This document shows positions 1,839 through 64,000 of a DNA stretch of 64,000 bases, piece after piece. The notes under the pieces are model-generated. The model was not told the origin of the DNA, did no database searches, and saw nothing but the letters and a program-made list of their open reading frames with translations. How positions within the stretch are numbered: position 1 is the stretch's first letter; the number at the start of each line of letters is the position of its first letter. Position numbers and translations under genes: made by a program. Source of the stretch: Obrimoposthia wandeli (Eukaryota); NCBI GenBank assembly GCA_977020255.1, contig CDROCS010001688.1, positions 62,001 to 126,000 of the forward strand, read 5' to 3'.

Positions 1839-2104
1839 TATACCCAAGTTACCTCAAGATGCTCGTTTCAGCGAGAATTTGTTGTGCTCTAGGCAAGGCA
1901 CTTATTTATAGACCTAGTCGTTCTACGTTGAAAATAAGTAACACCGCATAGAGCCCAACAAAACTCGCCCTTCGGGAGTGATTCAGCGTATCTACTTCTG
2001 TGTCAAATGTGTTTAAAAGGGAATGCCATTCCTACATACATTTTCCTTGAATTAAATACGCTGAGAACACTCTGAATCCTGCATCTTGAGGTAGCTTGGG
2101 TATA
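1839..2104 (+). mobile_element. ERIC-like MITE, 266 bp, copy 1 (between modA and modB)
   Basis: 24-bp terminal inverted repeats TATACCCAAG(T/C)TACCTCAAGATGC (23/24), TA at both ends, internal hairpins; near-identical inverted copy at 35385-35650. Confidence 0.85.
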
Positions 2105-6840: not shown

Positions 6841-7876
6841 GGTGATTCCTTTCTAGCTGTCATTATTTAAAGGCGCTGATGTATAGATAAGCACGCATTA
6901 TTCTAAAGAGTAGTGCGTTAAAGAGAATGAGAGTTAAATTTTTAAGAATAATATTTAAATGTTGTACCTCTGGCGTTGGTGTGTCATTTAAATGGCGAGT
7001 TGTTTTTTATTAGGTCACTTACTTAAGATGCTAAGTGCATGGTTGTAAAGGTTAATATTCTTATTGAATTTGATGTTTAAAATCAACATATAATCGGATA
7101 TATAGTGAAGGTAATTTTGATTTTGGAATAAAGGTTATGATTTAAATTTGCATGAATGACTTGTAAATATTTTTGTTAGACTTTTAATTTTGTTTGTTTT
7201 TCTAGCCACTAGATAAACATTGAGCCATTATTTTGACAAGTGTTCAGGTTCGATTCAGTATTACTTTTGATTTTATAATGATTGAAAAATGTGGCGGTAT
7301 AGTGTGTACCTTGTTTTTTTTGAGTAACTGTAGAGGCTGCATTTAATTTCTTATATGATTTTTAAATGAGCACCATCAACAGCTTGTGTCAGTTTTGAGA
7401 CGTAATGTTATTTTTGAGATTTGTTAATTTCTAATTTTTCCATCGTAAGTTTTTATTTTGTTTTATTGTTTTTTGTTAGTGTGTTTTTTTATTGTTATTT
7501 TTTGTCTTATTGTTTTTTGGTGGTTATTTAAAAGTTAGATATTAACGTGGAAAATATTTATTTTATTTAACTTATCAGTTCACATTCTTCATCTTTATGT
7601 TCTGGTATTTATTTGGTTTTTGTTTTTATGTTTTAATACATTGGCTTATGGTTTGCGTTGGTGTGTTTTCTGTCAAGTCTCTGTCAGGATTATAGTTTAA
7701 GTGAGGGCTGGGATTGAATTGTTAGATAGAAAAAGAGTATATTATTTGCGCGATTCATAGGTTGGTAAAAATAGCCTATATTTACTTAATCATTAGGCTC
7801 TAATTAAACGCATTAATGGCCTGTTTAATTTGTCTATTGATACACCAAGACTATTATAAATATATTGGAAGTACTC

Positions 7877-8518
7877 ATGCGATTAATATCATTATTACTT
7901 ATATCTACATTCACGTTAGTTGGTTGTGGTTCTGGCGGCTCGGATGGAGGTCAAGTTTCATCTGGTGGAAATGCTAGTACCGATGGTGGCAGTAGTGTAC
8001 CTGATAGCGGCAATAATGGCGGAGGTACTGTACCTGATAGCGGTAATGATGGCACAACAACTACCCCGCCAGTATCGCTCCCACCAGCACCTGACACTGG
8101 TTTCCAAGATGAAATGCTAACAGCAGTCAATGCAGCTCGTGCTACTCAACAAGATTGTGGTGGTACAATTATGCCACCAGTACCTGCATTAACGTGGGAT
8201 ACACAATTAGAACAAGCGGCTGAGAAGCATTCAAATGATATGGCGAATTATGACTTTTTCAGCCATACAGGCTCAGACGGTTCAAGTGTCAGTACGCGTG
8301 TTACCGCTCAAGGTTATACATGGAGCTCTGTGGGTGAAAACATTGCAGCAGGTCAGAAAGATGTCGATGCGGTTATGACCTCGTGGATAAACAGCCCCGG
8401 CCACTGTCTCAATATCATGAGTGCAAACTTCACGCAGATGGGCGCATCGTTTGTGACAAACTCATCGACGCAGTATGGTATTTATTGGACTCAGGTCTTT
8501 GCAAAGCCTCGTAGTTAA
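7877..8518 (+). CDS. CAP (SCP/PR-1) domain lipoprotein
   Basis: Lipobox TLVGC; Gly/Ser/Pro linker; HSNDMA, FSHTGSDGS, GENIA, WINSPGHC, YWTQVF. Confidence 0.9.
   Translation: MRLISLLLISTFTLVGCGSGGSDGGQVSSGGNASTDGGSSVPDSGNNGGGTVPDSGNDGTTTTPPVSLPPAPDTGFQDEMLTAVNAARATQQDCGGTIMPPVPALTWDTQLEQAAEKHSNDMANYDFFSHTGSDGSSVSTRVTAQGYTWSSVGENIAAGQKDVDAVMTSWINSPGHCLNIMSANFTQMGASFVTNSSTQYGIYWTQVFAKPRS
7996..8053 (+). repeat. Intragenic 33-bp-period tandem repeat (VPDSGNNG / VPDSGNDG)
   Basis: tgtacctgatagcgg at 7996 and 8029. Confidence 0.8.
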
Positions 8519-9888: not shown

Positions 9889-10692
9889 TTAGTGACTTGG
9901 TTGAGTTGTTTGAGGCTGTGCTTGTTCAGAATCAGGCGTTTTAGTCGGTTGAGGTTCAGATCCCGCCTTTTCGTTGTAATTATCGAACTTGTATTCCATT
10001 TCTTGATTACGCATTTCACCAAAAAAGAAACGGCGCACGTTAGCTTTTAAATAGGTTAAGCCCATTTTGATGAAGCCTTCTTGTTCAAGGCGGCGAGGGT
10101 CGAAAGTAAACGTGATTGGCAGCATGCGGTAGCGCCAGGTTTTTGCAGCTCGTTTTACATAATCACAGTCTTCGCATAGGGTGATGCTTTCATCAAACCC
10201 GTCAATTTCATTGTGAACGCGTTTGGTCGAAAACAAGCATGCACCAACAGACGTCGGGAAGAAAAATGACGTAGCAAATAAACCAGCATTGAATACGCCG
10301 TAGCCAAGACGATAGCCCAGCGATAGCTCATCGGCCCCCATGTATACACCAGCAACGTCTAATTTGTTCTTATCAAGTTTGTGCAATGCACCCGTTAGAA
10401 ATGTTGGCGAAAGACGCACATCGGCATCAAGGAATAGCAAACGTTCGTTCTCTGCAAGGCAAGCGCCAGTATTGCGACCTAAGCTTGTACCTTTATTGTC
10501 CATTCGGTGAACAGTCAGCGCAGGTAAGGCTTTGGCAAAGCCCTTTGCAACGTCACATGTGTTATCGGTACTGTTTGAATCAACAACAATCACTTCAAAA
10601 TTTTGGTGAGTTTGTTTACTGAGATCATCCAATAGACGACCAATACGTTTTTCTTCATTTAGGGTAATAATAACAATGCTGATAGCGTTCAT
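9889..10692 (-). CDS. Glycosyltransferase family 2
   Basis: ISIVIITLNEE, VVDSNSTD, LLFLDAD (DxD), GFDESITLCEDCD. Confidence 0.9.
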   Translation of the reverse strand: MNAISIVIITLNEEKRIGRLLDDLSKQTHQNFEVIVVDSNSTDNTCDVAKGFAKALPALTVHRMDNKGTSLGRNTGACLAENERLLFLDADVRLSPTFLTGALHKLDKNKLDVAGVYMGADELSLGYRLGYGVFNAGLFATSFFFPTSVGACLFSTKRVHNEIDGFDESITLCEDCDYVKRAAKTWRYRMLPITFTFDPRRLEQEGFIKMGLTYLKANVRRFFFGEMRNQEMEYKFDNYNEKAGSEPQPTKTPDSEQAQPQTTQPSH

Positions 10693-35384: not shown

Positions 35385-35650
35385 TATACCCAAGCTACCT
35401 CAAGATGCAGGATTCAGAGCGATCTCAGCGTGTTTAATTCAAGGGAAATGTATGTAGGAATGGCATTCCCTTTCAAATACATTTGACGCAGAAGTAGATA
35501 CGCTGAATCACTCCCGAAGGGCGAGTTTTGTTGGGCTCTATGCGGTGTTACTTATTTTCAACGTAGAACGACTAGGTCTATAAATAAGCGCCTTGCCTAG
35601 AGCCCAACAAATTCTCGCTGAAACGAGCATCTTGAGGTAACTTGGGTATA
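35385..35650 (-). mobile_element. ERIC-like MITE, 266 bp, copy 2 (inverted relative to copy 1)
   Basis: Reverse complement of 1839-2104 with about 9 substitutions counted by eye; same 24-bp TIRs. Confidence 0.85.
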
Positions 35651-59255: not shown

Positions 59256-59651
59256 TTAACGCATACGGAACACGTCTGTTTTCTGATCACTTTGCACATC
59301 GGCAAAACTACGTACGAAAGGACCTTGTTGACGAATGCTAGAAGACAGCCCATCAATCACACTTTTTGCTTCATCTTTTGTTGCGAAATCACCATAAATA
59401 ACAGCGTACCAGTTTTGGCCACGGCTTTGTTTCCAATTCACCCAGATAGGATCTTGACCTTTTATCTCGCTGATATAGCCCCGAACATCACGTTCTTCGC
59501 TTATCGCGAGTATTTGAATGGTAAAACGTGTTGGGTCCATATGCCCATAGGCTTCGGTGGTGGTCATTACCCCCACGCATTGAGAAGAGTCATTTGAGGC
59601 ACAGCCAGAAAGAAATAGCAGCGCTACAAGAATTATTACATTACGCATCAA
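59256..59651 (-). CDS. SPOR-domain lipoprotein (DamX-like SPOR)
   Basis: Lipobox FLSGC; FTIQILA, WYAVIYGDFATKDEAK, PFVRSF. Confidence 0.8.
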   Translation of the reverse strand: MMRNVIILVALLFLSGCASNDSSQCVGVMTTTEAYGHMDPTRFTIQILAISEERDVRGYISEIKGQDPIWVNWKQSRGQNWYAVIYGDFATKDEAKSVIDGLSSSIRQQGPFVRSFADVQSDQKTDVFRMR

Positions 59652-59859
59652 TTGTCTCCATACAGATCTTTATAGTGTTTATAGCGGCCAATGGTGAAAA
59701 AAATAAAGCCGAATCTCGAATAATAACGGGATAAAAAAACCAAAGGTTCAATACAAACGAACCATGGCTTAGGTGAAACCAATGGCTTCGGTGGAATATT
59801 ACTCATGTGAAGAAAAAAAGGCTCACAAGAAGTGACTATTATACGAAGTTAAGATTAAA

Positions 59860-59875
59860 CTGTACATACATACAG
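59860..59875 (+). promoter_or_regulatory. LexA (SOS) box
   Basis: CTGT-acatacat-ACAG, 43 nt upstream of umuD. Confidence 0.9.
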
Positions 59876-59918
59876 TATCTCGTATTATGCGAGCATAAGA
59901 GAAGTACACGAGGGCGTT

Positions 59919-60305
59919 ATGCTTACATTGCCTATGTTTATAGAGTCGGTGAAATGCGGTTTTCCATCACCAGCTGATGGGCATCAAGAACAATTGGACC
60001 TTGATGAATATTTAATTCGAAATCCGAATGCCACGTTTCTGTTAAGGGCATCAGGTGAATCGATGATTGGCGTCGGTATTTACGACGGGGATTTGCTGGT
60101 GGTGGATCGGGCAGAGCAGGCCGTTGCAGGGCGAATTGTGATTGTGCGTATTTATGATGAATTTACCTGTAAACGCTTAATACGTTACAACGATGCATGG
60201 TGGCTAAAAGCAGAGAATCCAACATTTAAAGCCTTTCCGATACCGGAAGATGCTGAAATATTTGGCGTGGTTACACGTAACATACATGACTTGTTGAAAG
60301 CATAA
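59919..60305 (+). CDS. umuD: DNA polymerase V subunit UmuD
   Basis: CG/FPSPA cleavage site, ASGESM (Ser), GDLLVVD, FTCKRL (Lys). Confidence 0.92.
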   Translation: MLTLPMFIESVKCGFPSPADGHQEQLDLDEYLIRNPNATFLLRASGESMIGVGIYDGDLLVVDRAEQAVAGRIVIVRIYDEFTCKRLIRYNDAWWLKAENPTFKAFPIPEDAEIFGVVTRNIHDLLKA

Positions 60306-61609
60306 TGACAGGTCATCTTAGTGGGTATAAAAATCAAGTATGGGGACTCGTCGATGTAAAGAGCTTTTATTGTTCTTGTGAGCAGCTCTTTGACCCGCGA
60401 TTAGTTAATCAACCCATGGTGGTATTGTCGAATAACGATGGGTGTTGTGTTGCCGTTTCAGAGCAAGCGAAAGCATTAGGCATACAGCGAGGCGCACCTT
60501 GGTTCAAAATTGAGCGCGAAGCTCGGCGTCTAGGCGTACAAGTTCGCAGCTCTAACTATACGTTATATGCCGATATGAGCCGACGCTTTATAGAAGAACT
60601 TCATCATTTTTCACCGCATGTTGAACAATATTCCATAGATGAAGCCTTTGTGCGTTTAGATGGCTTCAAGCTTGATACTCTTGAACAATATGGTTCAACA
60701 ATACGAGACGCCATTCGCAATCATATTGGTTTGCCTGTGCGTGTAGGTATTGGTGCAACGCCAACCTTGGCCAAGCTTGGCAATCAGGCTGCTAAACAAT
60801 TTGAATGTCGAGTTGAAGGTGTCATTAAAATTGATTCAGATGTACGCCGTCAGTGGATTCTTGAGCGAACAGATATACAAGATATATGGGGGATCGGTGC
60901 TAAAACGGCGTCGCGTTTACGTACAACAGGCATTGATAATGCGCTACAGCTAGCGAACAAGACCCCAGAAGATATGCGCAGACTATGGAATATCGGTTTA
61001 GCGCGTACAGTCATGGAACTGCAAGGTATTGCTTGTATTGAGCCAGGAGACATTGATGAAACGCGTAAACAAATATTATCAAGCCGAAGCTTTGGCTCAG
61101 GTATTTCCAATTCTGATGAATTAAAAGCAGCGTTAGCATTTCATTGCCAGCGTGCGGGAGAAAAACTGCGTAAGCAAAGTAGCCAAGCTAATGTTGTTGG
61201 TGTGTTTTTACGTACGAATAGGCATAAGAACCTGCCACAACATAATAAAAGTAGTGCGATGCCACTAAGCTGCCCCAGCCAAGATAGTTACAAGTTTCTT
61301 GATCTTGCTTTGTTGCAGTTAAAGCAACTCTACCGACCGGGCTATGAGTACCAAAAGATTGGTGTAATTCTTAATGAATTAACAGAGGCGAAGAATGATA
61401 GCTTTCAATTGGATATGTTTAATACTAGTGCGCTTGATGAACATAAACGGCGAGATTTAATGGCAATCACCGATCAAGTGAATGCTCGATTTAAAAACGG
61501 TATTAAACCAGCATCTATTATTGGCTCAACAAACTGGCATATGCGACAGGCTTTTCGCTCTAACCGCTGGACAACGAGGCTTGATGAGCTGCCTATCGCG
61601 AAGTGTTAA
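60305..61609 (+). CDS. umuC: DNA polymerase V subunit UmuC
   Basis: SFYCSCE, VLSNNDGC, SSNYTLY, YSIDEAF, SSRSFG, C-terminal WTTRLDELP. Confidence 0.95.
   Translation: MTGHLSGYKNQVWGLVDVKSFYCSCEQLFDPRLVNQPMVVLSNNDGCCVAVSEQAKALGIQRGAPWFKIEREARRLGVQVRSSNYTLYADMSRRFIEELHHFSPHVEQYSIDEAFVRLDGFKLDTLEQYGSTIRDAIRNHIGLPVRVGIGATPTLAKLGNQAAKQFECRVEGVIKIDSDVRRQWILERTDIQDIWGIGAKTASRLRTTGIDNALQLANKTPEDMRRLWNIGLARTVMELQGIACIEPGDIDETRKQILSSRSFGSGISNSDELKAALAFHCQRAGEKLRKQSSQANVVGVFLRTNRHKNLPQHNKSSAMPLSCPSQDSYKFLDLALLQLKQLYRPGYEYQKIGVILNELTEAKNDSFQLDMFNTSALDEHKRRDLMAITDQVNARFKNGIKPASIIGSTNWHMRQAFRSNRWTTRLDELPIAKC
61571..61609 (+). repeat. Direct repeat copy 1 (last 39 nt of umuC; putative attL)
   Basis: acaacgaggcttgatgagctgcctatcgcgaagtgttaa. 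Confidence 0.9.
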
Positions 61610-61755
61610 TTATAGAGATGATGGGTATGTATGGTTATAGATAAATTTTTCCCTTGATAAATAAAGAACTCAAATACGGCAATGGAACTGTTCGCTGCAA
61701 GGTTTCAATATACAAGAAGAGTAGAATGTAAAAAGTTGAAATAACGCATTAAGCA

Positions 61756-61771
61756 TGTGAGCATTGTCGCA
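61756..61771 (+). promoter_or_regulatory. CRP-like site within the cargo
   Basis: TGTGA-gcattg-TCGCA (9/10). Confidence 0.5.
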
Positions 61772-61866
61772 CATGGTGATGTTTGTGAGATTAATTCCCT
61801 TCAAACGACGATTTACTATATTGATGAGCTAGTATGTGTGTAGTTTTATATTCATATTGGTAATGA

Positions 61867-62079
61867 ATGTTAGGCATAAAAGCTTATCGGCTCCGCACTG
61901 ATTTTAAGATAACGCCTTCTATATTGACGGCTCTCGATGCCTTACCTCAGAGTACCTGGCTGTCTCACGTTAACCAAGCGTGTTATTCAGGTAAGTGGCA
62001 AGTGCATCCTTTGCGAGGGCTTGCTAAGCACTCCCGACTATCGCCAATAACTGACACTACAGAAATCGAGGGTTATTAA
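61867..62079 (+). pseudogene. N-terminal fragment resembling aspartyl/asparaginyl beta-hydroxylase-domain proteins
   Basis: LDALPQSTWLSHVNQACYSGKWQVHPLRG resembles the N-terminus of this 2OG-Fe(II) family; ends before any HxD motif. Confidence 0.45.
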
Positions 62080-62081
62080 TT

Positions 62082-62849
62082 ATGCAAAAAGGATCACGAG
62101 TAGAATTAGATCAGCAACGTCGTCAGTTTATCGGCTCTAGTTTTGCGGTTTTTAGTGTGGCCTGTATGGCCGGGGTATCAGCTCCGGTATTTGCCAACAA
62201 TCATTTATTAACGGACATTGCTTCTCAAGGAAACCTCAGTCGAATTACGCAAGAGCAGGTTGCTTCAATGGAAATAAGCGCACCAACCTTTACGGTTGAA
62301 ATGCCTGAAGGTGAAACGATGACATTAACACGTCAGTTGCGTATAGCACGTCGGTATCAGGATCTCTTGTATCTTTCATACCAGAACGAGCCTTCAATTC
62401 ATGTCTATGATTCAGCCTCTTTGCAGTATCGTTTCGAAATCCAATTTAGTGATCAATTAGGTATATTGAAAGATTTTGCAGTGAGTGATAATGGCGATGT
62501 TTTTGCGCTGTTTACCGGTCAGCACGCCATTACTCATCTGAGTTCCAATGGGGCGTTTGTCCAAAAAATAGGTGAGTTTGGAATTGATAAACAAGAGCAG
62601 CTGAACGGGCCCAGCTCACTAACTATAGATTCCTTGGGCAATATTCATGTTTGGGACTTAGGTGCACGACAAATAAAAGTATTTACTTCTAATAACCAAT
62701 TCGTGCGGCAGTATGGTCAAGCGCGGCTAAGTCCGGTGCAAAGGGTGAGAAGTATTGATGGGCGAGACTCTTTGGTCGTGAAAGGTGGCGTATTGGGCGA
62801 TAGAGAGTGGTACTTTACGCCGGACGGGAATGCGCTACCAACCATCTAA
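62082..62849 (+). CDS. Tat-signal NHL-repeat (beta-propeller) protein
   Basis: QRRQFIG twin-arginine signal with PVFA cleavage; GEFG...QLNGPSSLTIDSLGNIHVWD...IKVF NHL repeat. Confidence 0.75.
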   Translation: MQKGSRVELDQQRRQFIGSSFAVFSVACMAGVSAPVFANNHLLTDIASQGNLSRITQEQVASMEISAPTFTVEMPEGETMTLTRQLRIARRYQDLLYLSYQNEPSIHVYDSASLQYRFEIQFSDQLGILKDFAVSDNGDVFALFTGQHAITHLSSNGAFVQKIGEFGIDKQEQLNGPSSLTIDSLGNIHVWDLGARQIKVFTSNNQFVRQYGQARLSPVQRVRSIDGRDSLVVKGGVLGDREWYFTPDGNALPTI

Positions 62850-62855
62850 AACAAC

Positions 62856-62894
62856 ACAACGAGGCTTGATGAGTTGCCTATCGCGAAGTGTTAA
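62856..62894 (+). repeat. Direct repeat copy 2 (duplicated umuC 3' end; putative attR)
   Basis: acaacgaggcttgatgagttgcctatcgcgaagtgttaa, one mismatch to copy 1. Confidence 0.9.
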
Positions 62895-63038
62895 GGTCTA
62901 TTTAGACTGGCTCTTATATCAAAAAAATGAAAATTATCGATTCTTATAGCTTTTATTTATGACATAGAGGTAAACGGTATTTTTCTTTCTTACTGATCTT
63001 TCACGATAATGAGAGAACAGAAGAAAAGGATAGTGTCT

Positions 63039-63248
63039 ATGTATAAATGGATTGGCGCCGTGGTTGTTTTATTGTTGATACTTGGGTCTTTGATGACATC
63101 AGGCTTAGTAACGGCATTATTCGATCTTACTGCTTTTTTGGTTTTATTAGCTTTAGTGTGGATTCGAGCTGTTAAATCATCAGATAAGAAGCAACAAAAG
63201 CAGCAAAGCAACGGAAGTGATAGCACACCCGTTTTTAAAGCAGATTAG
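63039..63248 (+). CDS. Small hypothetical membrane protein (69 aa)
   Basis: RBS AAGGA; two hydrophobic helices and a polar tail. Confidence 0.55.
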   Translation: MYKWIGAVVVLLLILGSLMTSGLVTALFDLTAFLVLLALVWIRAVKSSDKKQQKQQSNGSDSTPVFKAD

Positions 63249-63253
63249 ACTAT

Positions 63254-63279
63254 AAAAAAACGAGTGCGGCTGCACTCGT
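63254..63279 (-). terminator. Terminator downstream of the YeiH-family gene
   Basis: acgagtgc-ggct-gcactcgt with T7 on the minus strand. Confidence 0.7.
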
Positions 63280-63301
63280 CTTGTCTTTGTTGCTCATTTA
63301 T

Positions 63302-64000
63302 TTACGCAACATTCAGCAATATATAGCTTAAAGAGCCCGTACCAATAGCCACCCAGAGTAAAACGCCCAATAGCAGTGGCTTCAGCCCTGCTGCGCGTAG
63401 CTTCTGAATGGTAATGCCTGAGCCGATTAAGAATAAGCACAGCACTAATAGTCGTTTAGATGCAACGAATACGTGGCTATAAACACTTTCTAAAGACGGA
63501 ACAAAGTGCGCGAATACAATCGCAAGGCAATAAAACAAAATAAAGTAAGGGATACCAATTTTCTTATTGTCACCTTTAAATAGAAATGCACTTAAAAAGG
63601 CAATGGGTACAATCCATAATGCACGTGCCAGCTTAATGGTTGTGGCCGTTCGTAATGCTTCATCACCGTAAGCGCCCGCAGCACCCACCACCGATGATGT
63701 ATCGTGAATAGCAATTGCAGCCCAAGTACCAAAAGCGTGTTGGCTCATTTCAAGTAAATGACCAATCGCAGGGAAGATAAACAACGCAATGGAATTCAAT
63801 ACAAATACCGTTGCTAATGCTAAAGAGGTTTGATCGTCTCGAGCATTAATCGCAGGTGCGACGGCAGCAATGGCACTACCACCACAAATAGCGGTACCTG
63901 AAGCAATTAAATGCCCGGTCTTTTGGTCTAAACGTAGCGCCTTGGTAAGAAACCAGCCGAAAATCAGAGTGAAAAAAATTGATCCGACAATTAAGCCAAA
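63302..64000 (-). CDS. YeiH / UPF0324 putative sulfate exporter family (5'-partial)
   Basis: Frame open to window edge; [36 protein letters not shown]. Confidence 0.9.

What the first reader, a model, noticed from the sequence alone, without database searches (positions are those of the whole stretch)
61571..62894. The umuC 3' end is used as an attachment-like site: a 39-bp duplication brackets an integrase-less 1.25-kb cargo
Seen: the last 39 nt of umuC (encoding TTRLDELPIAKC*) recur at 62856-62894 with one mismatch, in direct orientation, 6 nt after the stop codon of the cargo gene. Known: integrative elements that target a gene's 3' end rebuild the gene on one side and leave a duplicated 3' fragment on the other; this is typical at tRNA/tmRNA genes, and umuC-family genes (rumB, rulB) are known insertion hotspots, mostly by disruption. 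Inferred: a non-disruptive element family uses the conserved C-terminal tip of chromosomal umuC, next to a LexA-controlled operon. What remains is either a decayed island or a minimal cassette mobilised in trans. Near-identity of the repeats suggests a recent event.
Basis: partly seen in the sequence, partly recalled or inferred. Interest (0 to 1): 0.78.

Follow-up and report, generated by a model that had tools for sequence, protein, structure and literature searches.

The report
Decayed gene island at umuC's tip
The 39-letter repeat is real and marks the two ends of the shrunken remains of an old gene island that entered the very end of the DNA-repair gene umuC without breaking it, in one group of deep-sea Photobacterium; it is a tidy but fairly ordinary case, with no sign that it still moves.

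Summary
Observation confirmed: 61571-61609 and 62856-62894 are direct repeats, 38/39 identical, never matched in shuffles. The window is a Photobacterium (P. profundum group) contig.

Three related species have the empty site: one umuC end, then the flank that follows copy 2 here. P. frigidiphilum and two metagenome contigs carry the same left junction with larger versions of the same island (16.7 kb in P. frigidiphilum). In those three, the last 34 nt of umuC are a foreign, almost wholly synonymous version. P. frigidiphilum keeps 20 nt of the resident end on the far side. So an insertion at the pentamer ACAAC rebuilt umuC and displaced its old end, as prophage e14 does at icd.

- No copy holds a recombinase.
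- Only this one island lineage, in one clade, uses the site. No second umuC end turned up in 401 Vibrionaceae genomes, viral contigs or plasmids.
- The island is old: copies differ by 8-12%, dS 0.28.

The window's 1.25 kb is a double-deletion remnant: a promoter region, a 61-codon gene stump and an intact Tat-exported NHL-propeller gene. The near-identity of its repeats is best read as later homogenisation.

Verdict: a new member of a known kind; modest interest.

The parts
59860..59875 (+). LexA (SOS) box-like palindrome upstream of umuD
   Evidence: Read directly: CTGT, then 8 nt, then ACAG. The consensus comes from general knowledge and was not tested further. It overlaps the promoter-like hits.
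59919..60305 (+). umuD (128 codons, Peptidase_S24)
   Evidence: PF00717, E 1.6e-28.
60305..61609 (+). umuC (434 codons), intact
   Evidence: IMS, IMS_C, DUF4113. It is 92-95% identical in protein to P. frigidiphilum, P. indicum and P. profundum.
61571..61609 (+). Repeat copy 1: the functional last 39 nt of umuC. It starts with the pentamer ACAAC (61571-61575), where native sequence gives way to the foreign end in the other island-bearing genomes.
61610..61866 (+). Left end of the island: 257-nt non-coding region upstream of the cluster's first gene. It begins directly after the umuC stop codon, and the junction is shared with P. frigidiphilum, L075 and L076.
   Evidence: Identity is 92% to L075 and 88.5% to P. 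frigidiphilum. The stretch 61646-61710 is missing from P. frigidiphilum and L076.
61867..62049 (+). 5' stump (61 codons) of an aspartyl/asparaginyl hydroxylase-methyltransferase fusion gene. The deletion joint is at 62049/62050; the mechanical ORF runs on to 62079.
   Evidence: The full-length gene has 544 codons in L075 and 563-564 in G171. About 1.4 kb (L075 9262-10686) is missing here.
62082..62849 (+). Intact cargo gene: a 255-residue protein with a twin-arginine signal and an NHL-like beta-propeller.
   Evidence: RR at residues 13-14 is invariant in 7 homologues. The AlphaFold model has mean pLDDT 60.8 with a core of 70-88. The best Foldseek matches are NHL domains, and the atlas neighbours are NHL-repeat clusters. 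omega is 0.17-0.20. The gene is a mosaic: its 5' part resembles P. frigidiphilum and its last ~80 nt resemble L075 and G389.
62850..62855 (+). Right joint: 6 nt (AACAAC) between the cargo stop codon and copy 2. It resembles what follows the same stop codon in L075.
   Evidence: The exact break cannot be placed closer than a few nucleotides.
62856..62894 (+). Repeat copy 2: the displaced umuC end, now non-coding, directly followed by the flank that follows umuC at empty sites.
   Evidence: It matches copy 1 at 38/39 and the native end of the three empty-site species at 35/39. The next 56 nt are only 58-68% like the relatives.
62895..63301 (+). Ancestral downstream flank: a small conserved membrane ORF (63039-63248 in the relatives' register) and a terminator-like hairpin at 63260-63279.
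63302..64000 (-). yeiH-family gene; it runs off the end of the window.
   Evidence: PF03601, E 1.5e-46. It is syntenic in most Photobacterium loci.

Best explanation
The repeat marks the two ends of what is left of one old genomic island in the last 34-39 nt of umuC, in the P. profundum / indicum / frigidiphilum group.

The island entered at a single point, the pentamer ACAAC. It brought its own version of the umuC end, so the gene stayed whole, and it pushed the resident end to the far side. Prophage e14 does the same at icd.

I think the entry was most likely made by a site-specific recombinase of the island that has since been lost. That step is inferred.

The island carried an accessory gene cluster:
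- a hydroxylase-methyltransferase;
- a Tat-exported NHL propeller;
- acyl- or formyl-transferases;
- phage-tail-collar proteins;
- in one variant, a 3,941-residue Ig-repeat adhesin.

In the window, two deletions cut it to 1.25 kb: the upstream region, a 61-codon stump of the first gene and the intact NHL gene.

The two repeat copies are almost identical here because they were homogenised later. This could be gene conversion, or overwriting of both copies by recombination with the population's umuC allele. It is not a sign of recent insertion.

Today the remnant is probably immobile. It is gained or lost only through homologous recombination in its flanks or between its repeats.
For: SHOWN
(1) Empty sites. 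P. indicum, P. profundum and G105 have one umuC end, followed at once by the flank that follows copy 2 here.
(2) Shared left junction. The junction right after the umuC stop codon is the same in P. frigidiphilum (16.7-kb island), L075 and L076.
(3) Foreign umuC end. In those three, the last 34 nt of umuC differ from the clade's native end at 12 positions. Only one amino acid changes, through multi-step synonymous codon swaps. The foreign end resembles the ends of distant Photobacterium species. The switch comes right after ACAAC in three different upstream umuC backgrounds.
(4) Matching right boundary. Homology of the window's copy 2 with umuC starts at that same ACAAC, so both junctions map to one 5-nt point. 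P. frigidiphilum keeps the last 20 nt of the native end (19/20) next to the conserved flank.
(5) Age. The window's island differs by 8-12% from the other three. The NHL gene has dS 0.28-0.42 and omega 0.17-0.20.
(6) Decay. Three of the four copies carry independent internal deletions; one has a 9-of-10 microhomology at the joint.
(7) Homogenisation. Copy 2 is 38/39 like copy 1, although the 56 nt next to it are only 58-68% like any relative. All its differences from the native end are at third codon positions, and 3 of 4 (4 of 5 in copy 1) match the foreign end's state.
(8) Frequent recombination. umuDC in this clade is a mosaic, with pairwise identity by segment ranging from 0.83 to 1.00.

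PRECEDENT
Against: - No integrase, excisionase or transposase in any copy, including the complete P. frigidiphilum island, whose 16.7 kb is filled by cluster genes.
- The same cluster at other loci in five Vibrionaceae genomes has no umuC-like ends and no recombinase nearby.
- No element with this site was found in 401 Vibrionaceae genomes, viral contigs or plasmids.
- The P. frigidiphilum right junction keeps only 20 nt, so only the window's right junction agrees with the ACAAC point.
- The window's island is the outgroup of the four. Which left end is ancestral, foreign or native-like, is therefore not settled.
- Homogenisation of 39-nt repeats is inferred, not seen.
Confidence: 0.5

Rival explanations
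1. Same history of old insertion, decay and homogenisation, but the original insertion was a one-off illegitimate event. It would not have been made by a site-specific recombinase. A linear fragment from a donor Photobacterium, in which the cluster lay just downstream of umuC, was captured during natural transformation or break repair. Its left end was joined through the 8-11 nt of identity around TGGACAAC. Its right end was joined by microhomology at the same spot (homology-facilitated illegitimate recombination or similar).
For: - No recombinase anywhere.
- The foreign end looks like a real umuC end of another Photobacterium lineage, as an anchor fragment would.
- Microhomology-mediated deletions are active in this island.
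- The clade recombines heavily.
- Only one lineage and one event are needed.
- This kind of recombination is documented in transformable bacteria and in E. coli conjugation (PMC3240628).
Against: - No genome among the 67 Photobacterium species has the cluster next to umuC apart from this clade.
- Such recombination normally uses an anchor of well over 100 nt and leaves a stretch of donor sequence inside the anchor. Here donor sequence starts only 34 nt from the gene's end, in three different upstream backgrounds.
- A short core followed by imperfect, coding-preserving homology is the textbook look of an attachment site.
Confidence: 0.27
2. One reading: the 1.25-kb unit is a minimal cassette that is still mobile. 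It would be excised and re-inserted at the umuC tip by a recombinase encoded elsewhere, or by RecA acting on the 39-nt repeats. The near-identity of the repeats would then reflect a recent move between close relatives.
For: - The repeats are 38/39 identical, while their non-coding surroundings are much more diverged.
- The native end is invariant over a 42-nt run in the three empty-site species. Only 0.4% of 39-nt windows in umuC are invariant. This could be a common scar.
- Copy 2 starts exactly at ACAAC.
Against: - No helper element or second site in 401 genomes, viral contigs or plasmids.
- No alternative allele in the assembly.
- The unit is plainly a deletion product of a larger cluster, and its copies have diverged in step with the core genome.
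- The ends have no inverted repeats.
Confidence: 0.08
3. A Xer-dependent element of the IMEX kind: integrase-less because it uses the host's XerCD at a dif-like site. A dif-like site lies about 20 kb further along the contig.
For: The element has no integrase of its own, and a dif-like 28-mer lies at contig position 145695-145722 (lead from note s1-204646).
Against: Neither junction resembles either dif-like site of this genome better than shuffled sequence does. The best match is 16/28, and p ranges from 0.13 to 0.8.
Confidence: 0.02
4. Copy 2 is the end of a second, decayed umuC, or the duplication is an assembly artefact.
For: None beyond the repeat itself.
Against: - Upstream of copy 2 lies the intact 3' end of the NHL gene, matched to its stop codon by L075 and G389.
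- The left junction recurs in three independent assemblies.
- There is no shared sequence at the right joint at which an assembler could mis-join.
- Reads could not be inspected.
Confidence: 0.03

Closest known systems
Prophage e14 and phage 21 at the icd gene of E. coli
   Same: The element enters the 3' part of a protein-coding gene and supplies a substitute end that differs mostly at synonymous sites. The displaced original end stays as a pseudo-fragment at the far side. PMC2973815 reports that loss of e14 changes 10 synonymous and 2 non-synonymous icd sites, citing Hill, Gray and Brody 1989. Here 12 nt and one amino acid differ.
   Different: e14 encodes its own integrase and excises. Here no recombinase is present in any copy, and the substitute end is 34 nt rather than about 165 nt (that length is from my own knowledge). 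The cargo is a metabolic or surface gene cluster, not a prophage.
Genomic islands that integrate into the last bases of a gene: SGI1 and MGI-type islands at trmE, and tRNA/tmRNA islands (from my own knowledge)
   Same: Non-disruptive use of a gene's 3' end, short direct repeats at both ends, and empty sites in relatives.
   Different: Those islands carry a tyrosine recombinase next to one end, and they recur across many hosts and with many cargos. This island is found in a single clade, in a single lineage, without a recombinase.
Cis-mobilisable elements (CIMEs) of Streptococcus: attachment-site-flanked remnants of integrative elements that lack their own recombination module (from my own knowledge)
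   Same: Direct-repeat-flanked cargo without an integrase, thought to derive from a complete element by deletion.
   Different: CIMEs share their site with a known, co-occurring integrative conjugative element that can move them. No such partner for the umuC tip was found.
Insertions in umuC-family genes of mobile elements: rumB of SXT/R391-type elements and rulB of Pseudomonas plasmids
   Same: The same gene family acts as a landing place.
   Different: Those insertions lie inside the gene, disrupt it, and sit in the copy carried by the mobile element (PMC8239412, PMC9058013). Here the chromosomal gene is hit in its last 34-39 nt and stays intact.
Products of homology-facilitated illegitimate recombination in transformable bacteria (PMC3240628)
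   Same: Foreign DNA is joined on one side through homology with a resident gene and on the other through microhomology. No element-encoded enzyme is needed.
   Different: The homologous stretch used here would be only 8-11 nt, and both joints fall at the same point.

Membership tests
Integrative island or prophage using a gene's 3' end (e14/icd, SGI1/trmE type) | Direct repeats at both ends derived from the target gene's 3' end | tested here: met
   The window has 39 nt at 38/39 identity. P. frigidiphilum has a 20-nt native remnant at its right end.
Integrative island or prophage using a gene's 3' end (e14/icd, SGI1/trmE type) | The target gene stays intact, with an element-borne substitute end | tested here: met
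   umuC has 434 codons in all four occupied genomes. A foreign 34-nt end is present in P. frigidiphilum, L075 and L076. In the window the left end is native-like with 4 foreign-state positions.
Integrative island or prophage using a gene's 3' end (e14/icd, SGI1/trmE type) | Empty sites in close relatives with a single copy of the repeat | tested here: met
   P. indicum, P. profundum and G105.
Integrative island or prophage using a gene's 3' end (e14/icd, SGI1/trmE type) | Element-encoded tyrosine or serine recombinase | tested here: not met
   No such ORF or Pfam domain in the window's 1.25 kb, the whole 16.7-kb P. frigidiphilum island, or the first 6 kb of L075.
Integrative island or prophage using a gene's 3' end (e14/icd, SGI1/trmE type) | Excision to a circle and a restored site | not testable with these tools
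Integrative island or prophage using a gene's 3' end (e14/icd, SGI1/trmE type) | The same site used in several lineages or by several cargos | tested here: not met
   Only one island lineage in one clade. Of the 67 Photobacterium genomes, only P. frigidiphilum has the island at umuC, and no genome in a sample of 401 Vibrionaceae has a second umuC end. Weak hits in two other species were chance.
Cis-mobilisable element (CIME) | A complete integrative element that uses the same attachment site exists and can supply the recombinase | tested here: not met
   Neither umuC end was found in viral contigs. There was no plasmid copy and no extra umuC end in the genomes searched.
Xer-dependent element (IMEX) | dif-like 28-nt site at the junctions | tested here: not met
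   Best 16/28 against the genome's own dif-like sites; not better than shuffles.
Transposon or insertion sequence | Terminal inverted repeats, a short fixed target duplication and a transposase | tested here: not met
   No terminal inverted repeats in the window or in P. frigidiphilum, and no transposase. The repeat is 39 nt, although the junctions do overlap by 5 nt (ACAAC).
Homology-facilitated illegitimate recombination product | One joint within homology to a resident gene, the other at a microhomology | tested here: inconclusive
   The left switch lies in 8-11 nt of identity. The right joint cannot be placed closer than a few nt. The donor is unknown.

The most novel reading that the evidence does not exclude
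The umuC tip (core ACAAC) is a true attachment site for integrase-less cassettes that are still moved in trans by an unlinked recombinase. They swap umuC ends with their hosts as they go. This would explain three things: the foreign end in three genomes, the identical 42-nt end in three 'empty' species (a common scar), and the near-identical repeats here. Because the cassette lies downstream of the LexA-controlled umuDC operon with no terminator in between, its cargo, and perhaps its movement, could be tied to the SOS response.
Probability: 0.07. Interest if true: 0.7.

Novelty: new member of a known kind. Interest (0 to 1): 0.3.

Why it matters
If the best reading holds, this adds the 3' tip of chromosomal umuC to the list of gene ends that islands use without breaking them. 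It also gives a clean natural series, from the empty site through 16.7-kb and at least 6-kb islands to a 1.25-kb remnant. The series shows how such an island decays through microhomology deletions while one gene stays under selection.

It carries a caution as well. Near-identical flanking repeats do not date an insertion when the repeat is part of a recombining gene.

It does not open a long-standing question. Only the unlikely reading of a still-mobile cassette would be of wide interest.

Tried and rejected
- Second decayed umuC: rejected. The intact NHL gene end lies upstream of copy 2.
- Longer decayed umuC fragment at the P. frigidiphilum right end: not supported. The alignment of the 98 nt upstream of the remnant to umuC ends is no better than shuffles (p 0.32), and the profile search did not pick it up.
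- Second umuC ends in other species: none within 6 kb downstream in 32 Photobacterium loci, and none in 401 Vibrionaceae genomes. Weak profile hits in L007 and L008 are a chance 12-mer inside a hydrolase gene.
- Transposon: no terminal inverted repeats.
- Xer/dif-like site: not significant.
- RNA structure that could explain conservation of the umuC end: z-scores from -0.14 to +0.17 for the native-type ends.
- Phage or plasmid carrier: none found.
- Alternative allele in the same assembly: none.
- Recombinases beside the same cluster in other genomes: none.
- Earlier notes of the scan on umuC: none.
Full report
**1. Observation**

The last 39 nt of umuC (61571-61609, stop codon included) recur in direct orientation at 62856-62894. 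There is one mismatch: C at 61589 against T at 62874. The window has no further copy, and none of 100 dinucleotide-preserving shuffles gave a match.

Copy 2 begins 6 nt after the stop codon of the 255-codon ORF 62082-62849. The stretch between the copies (61610-62855, 1,246 nt) has no recombinase-like ORF.

**2. Setting**

- The window lies on a contig of a 1.35-Gb assembly, but the DNA is bacterial.
- UmuC is 92-95% identical to that of Photobacterium frigidiphilum, P. indicum and P. profundum.
- The nearest genome at this locus is an unnamed species representative, G105. It is 94.6% identical over umuDC and 97.5% over the last 600 nt of umuC.
- The operon is typical: an SOS-box-like CTGT-8 nt-ACAG at 59860-59875, umuD at 59919-60305 and umuC at 60305-61609.
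- Downstream lie a small conserved membrane ORF, a hairpin terminator (63260-63279) and a yeiH-family gene on the other strand.

**3. Empty and occupied sites**

*Empty sites.* In P. indicum, P. profundum and G105, the window's sequence up to 61608 and its sequence from 62856 onward map onto overlapping stretches. Each of these genomes has one umuC end, followed at once by the flank that follows copy 2 here.

*P. frigidiphilum.* It has the same left junction, directly after the umuC stop codon, but a 16.7-kb insert.
- The genes in order are: a truncated hydroxylase gene, the NHL gene, a 415-codon gene, a formyltransferase-like gene, a phage-tail-collar gene and a 3,941-codon Ig/cadherin-repeat gene.
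- About 100 nt after the last gene come the final 20 nt of the native umuC end (19/20), and then the conserved flank.

*Metagenome contigs.* A scan for the left junction found two more occupied sites.
- L075 has an intact 544-codon hydroxylase-methyltransferase gene and a 255-codon NHL gene with the same kind of 3' end as the window's. A GNAT gene, a DUF6916 gene and tail-collar genes follow. The locus is cut before the right end.
- L076 is a P. frigidiphilum-like island that lacks the NHL gene through a deletion.

**4. The umuC ends**

- The three empty-site species share an identical native end.
- In P. frigidiphilum, L075 and L076, the last 34 nt of umuC differ from that native end at 12 positions. 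Only one residue changes (Pro to Gln). Several codons differ by two or three steps.
- This is the mark of a long-separated homologue, and it resembles the ends of distant Photobacterium species.
- The change from native to foreign sequence comes right after the pentamer ACAAC in all three, although their upstream umuC sequences belong to different haplotypes.
- Homology of the window's copy 2 with umuC starts at that same ACAAC. The left and right junctions therefore map to one 5-nt point.
- The anatomy is that of an element that enters a gene's 3' end, supplies a substitute end and leaves the old one behind. e14 does this at icd (PMC2973815, citing Hill, Gray and Brody 1989).

**5. What the window's copy is**

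Measured against L075, the window's island has lost two pieces:
- about 1.4 kb inside the first gene, leaving a 61-codon stump (joint at 62049/62050);
- everything from just after the NHL stop codon to the displaced umuC end.

Other points:
- The NHL gene is whole and is a mosaic. Its 5' part resembles P. frigidiphilum and its last ~80 nt resemble L075 and G389.
- It is under purifying selection, with omega 0.17-0.20.
- Its product has an invariant twin-arginine motif and a cleavable-looking signal.
- A moderate-confidence model has NHL propellers as its best structural matches.
- P. frigidiphilum and L076 carry their own, different deletions. One has a 9-of-10 microhomology at the joint.

The island is decaying.

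**6. Age**

- The window's island left part is 92%, 91% and 88.5% identical to L075, L076 and P. frigidiphilum. Those three are 95-99.5% alike.
- dS of the NHL gene between the window and P. frigidiphilum is 0.28, against 0.42 for umuC.
- The island is therefore roughly as old as the species split, or it has moved between already diverged lineages. It is not a recent arrival.

**7. Why the repeats are nearly identical**

- Copy 2 is non-coding, and the 56 nt next to it are only 58-68% like any relative. Yet copy 2 is 38/39 like copy 1 and 35/39 like the native end.
- Its four differences from the native end are all at third codon positions, and three match the foreign end's state. In copy 1 five positions differ and four match. 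The single mismatch between the copies has the foreign state on the left and the native state on the right.
- This points to patchy exchange between a foreign-type and a native-type end, followed by homogenisation. The numbers are small, and a rough estimate puts the chance coincidence near 0.1.
- umuDC in this clade is a patchwork of recombined segments, with pairwise identity from 0.83 to 1.00. Overwriting of both copies by the population's umuC allele is therefore as plausible as direct gene conversion.
- Either way, repeat identity does not date the insertion.

**8. Is there an element family or a recombinase?**

- The same gene cluster occurs in five other Vibrionaceae genomes at other loci. 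There it has no umuC-like ends and no recombinase nearby.
- Among 67 Photobacterium species, only P. frigidiphilum has the island at umuC.
- A degenerate pattern for the umuC end found exactly one credible copy per genome in a sample of 401 Vibrionaceae.
- A profile of the end found no second copy in any fetched locus apart from the window and the P. frigidiphilum remnant.
- Viral contigs and plasmids gave nothing.
- The island ends have no inverted repeats.
- The junctions are not dif-like, although a dif-like site lies about 20 kb away.
- Papers mention umuC only as a disruptive insertion site inside SXT/R391-type elements.

**9. Mechanism**

*Shown:* a single-point insertion at ACAAC with a substitute gene end, later deletions and later homogenisation.

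*Inferred:* the enzyme. I favour a site-specific recombinase that has since been lost (0.5 for the whole account). A short core followed by imperfect, coding-preserving homology is the classic look of an attachment site. Donor sequence starts only 34 nt from the gene's end in three different backgrounds. Both right ends show loss of the DNA where an integration module would have been.

*Main rival (0.27):* a one-off illegitimate capture during transformation or break repair. It needs no enzyme of the island and fits the total lack of recombinases. However, it would have used only 8-11 nt of identity.

*A still-mobile cassette (0.08)* is not excluded. The 42-nt run of identity of the native end in the three empty-site species is unexplained; only 0.4% of 39-nt windows in umuC are invariant. 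That run could be read as a common scar.

**10. Limits**

- The window's species has no second genome in the collections, so polymorphism within the species is unknown.

**11. Verdict**

The finding is real and is a neat case. It is a decayed member of a well-known kind of island at a site not reported in the papers searched. It is not a new kind of mobile element and not a recent event.

Noticed in passing
L074 (reverse strand, about 10250-10335) and L003 about 7670-7960; in the window about 2022-2104 (-) and 35385-35467 (+): An ~83-nt sequence lies downstream of the small membrane ORF in G105 and P. indicum but is absent at that spot in the window. It recurs at least 38 times at 80-99% identity (mostly 90% or more) on many contigs of the assembly. 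It looks like a dispersed MITE- or REP-like repeat of this Photobacterium.
   Followed up: no
Last 42 nt of umuC in L003, L004 and L074 (equivalent to window 61568-61609): The native umuC end is identical in three species that differ by about 8-10% in umuDC. It is the longest invariant run within umuC, and only 0.4% of 39-nt windows in the gene are invariant. No RNA structure explains it. The cause is unknown.
   Followed up: partly
window 59339-61609 against L002, L003, L004, L074 and L075: umuDC is a recombination mosaic between species. Pairwise identity in 200-nt windows swings between 0.83 and 1.00, and the nearest relative changes from segment to segment.
   Followed up: partly
L057, L058, L059, L060, L061; L045 1395-17803; L075 9079-14120: A conserved accessory cluster is scattered over a few Vibrionaceae genomes at different loci. 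It comprises an Asp/Asn hydroxylase fused to a methyltransferase, a Tat-signal NHL propeller, a 415-residue protein, a formyltransferase-like protein or GNAT plus DUF6916, and one to six phage-tail-collar proteins. Its function is unknown.
   Followed up: partly
window 62049/62050 and L076 (reverse strand) about 634-640: Two independent deletions in the hydroxylase gene, one in the window and one in L076, start only 6 nt apart in an AT-rich stretch but end at different places. This may be a fragile spot.
   Followed up: no
Contig C1688 at 145695-145722 of the assembly, 19.7 kb past the window's end: A dif-like 28-mer with 3 mismatches to the consensus used. A perfect one lies on contig C1028. 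umuDC therefore sits near a replication terminus region.
   Followed up: partly
L007 7430-8317, L014 and L016 7305-10720: The umuC-to-yeiH interval varies in length (0.4 to 3.4 kb) and content across Photobacterium species; one example is a 295-residue hydrolase-like gene in L007. No repeat of the umuC end is present, so the interval is a general variable spot.
   Followed up: no
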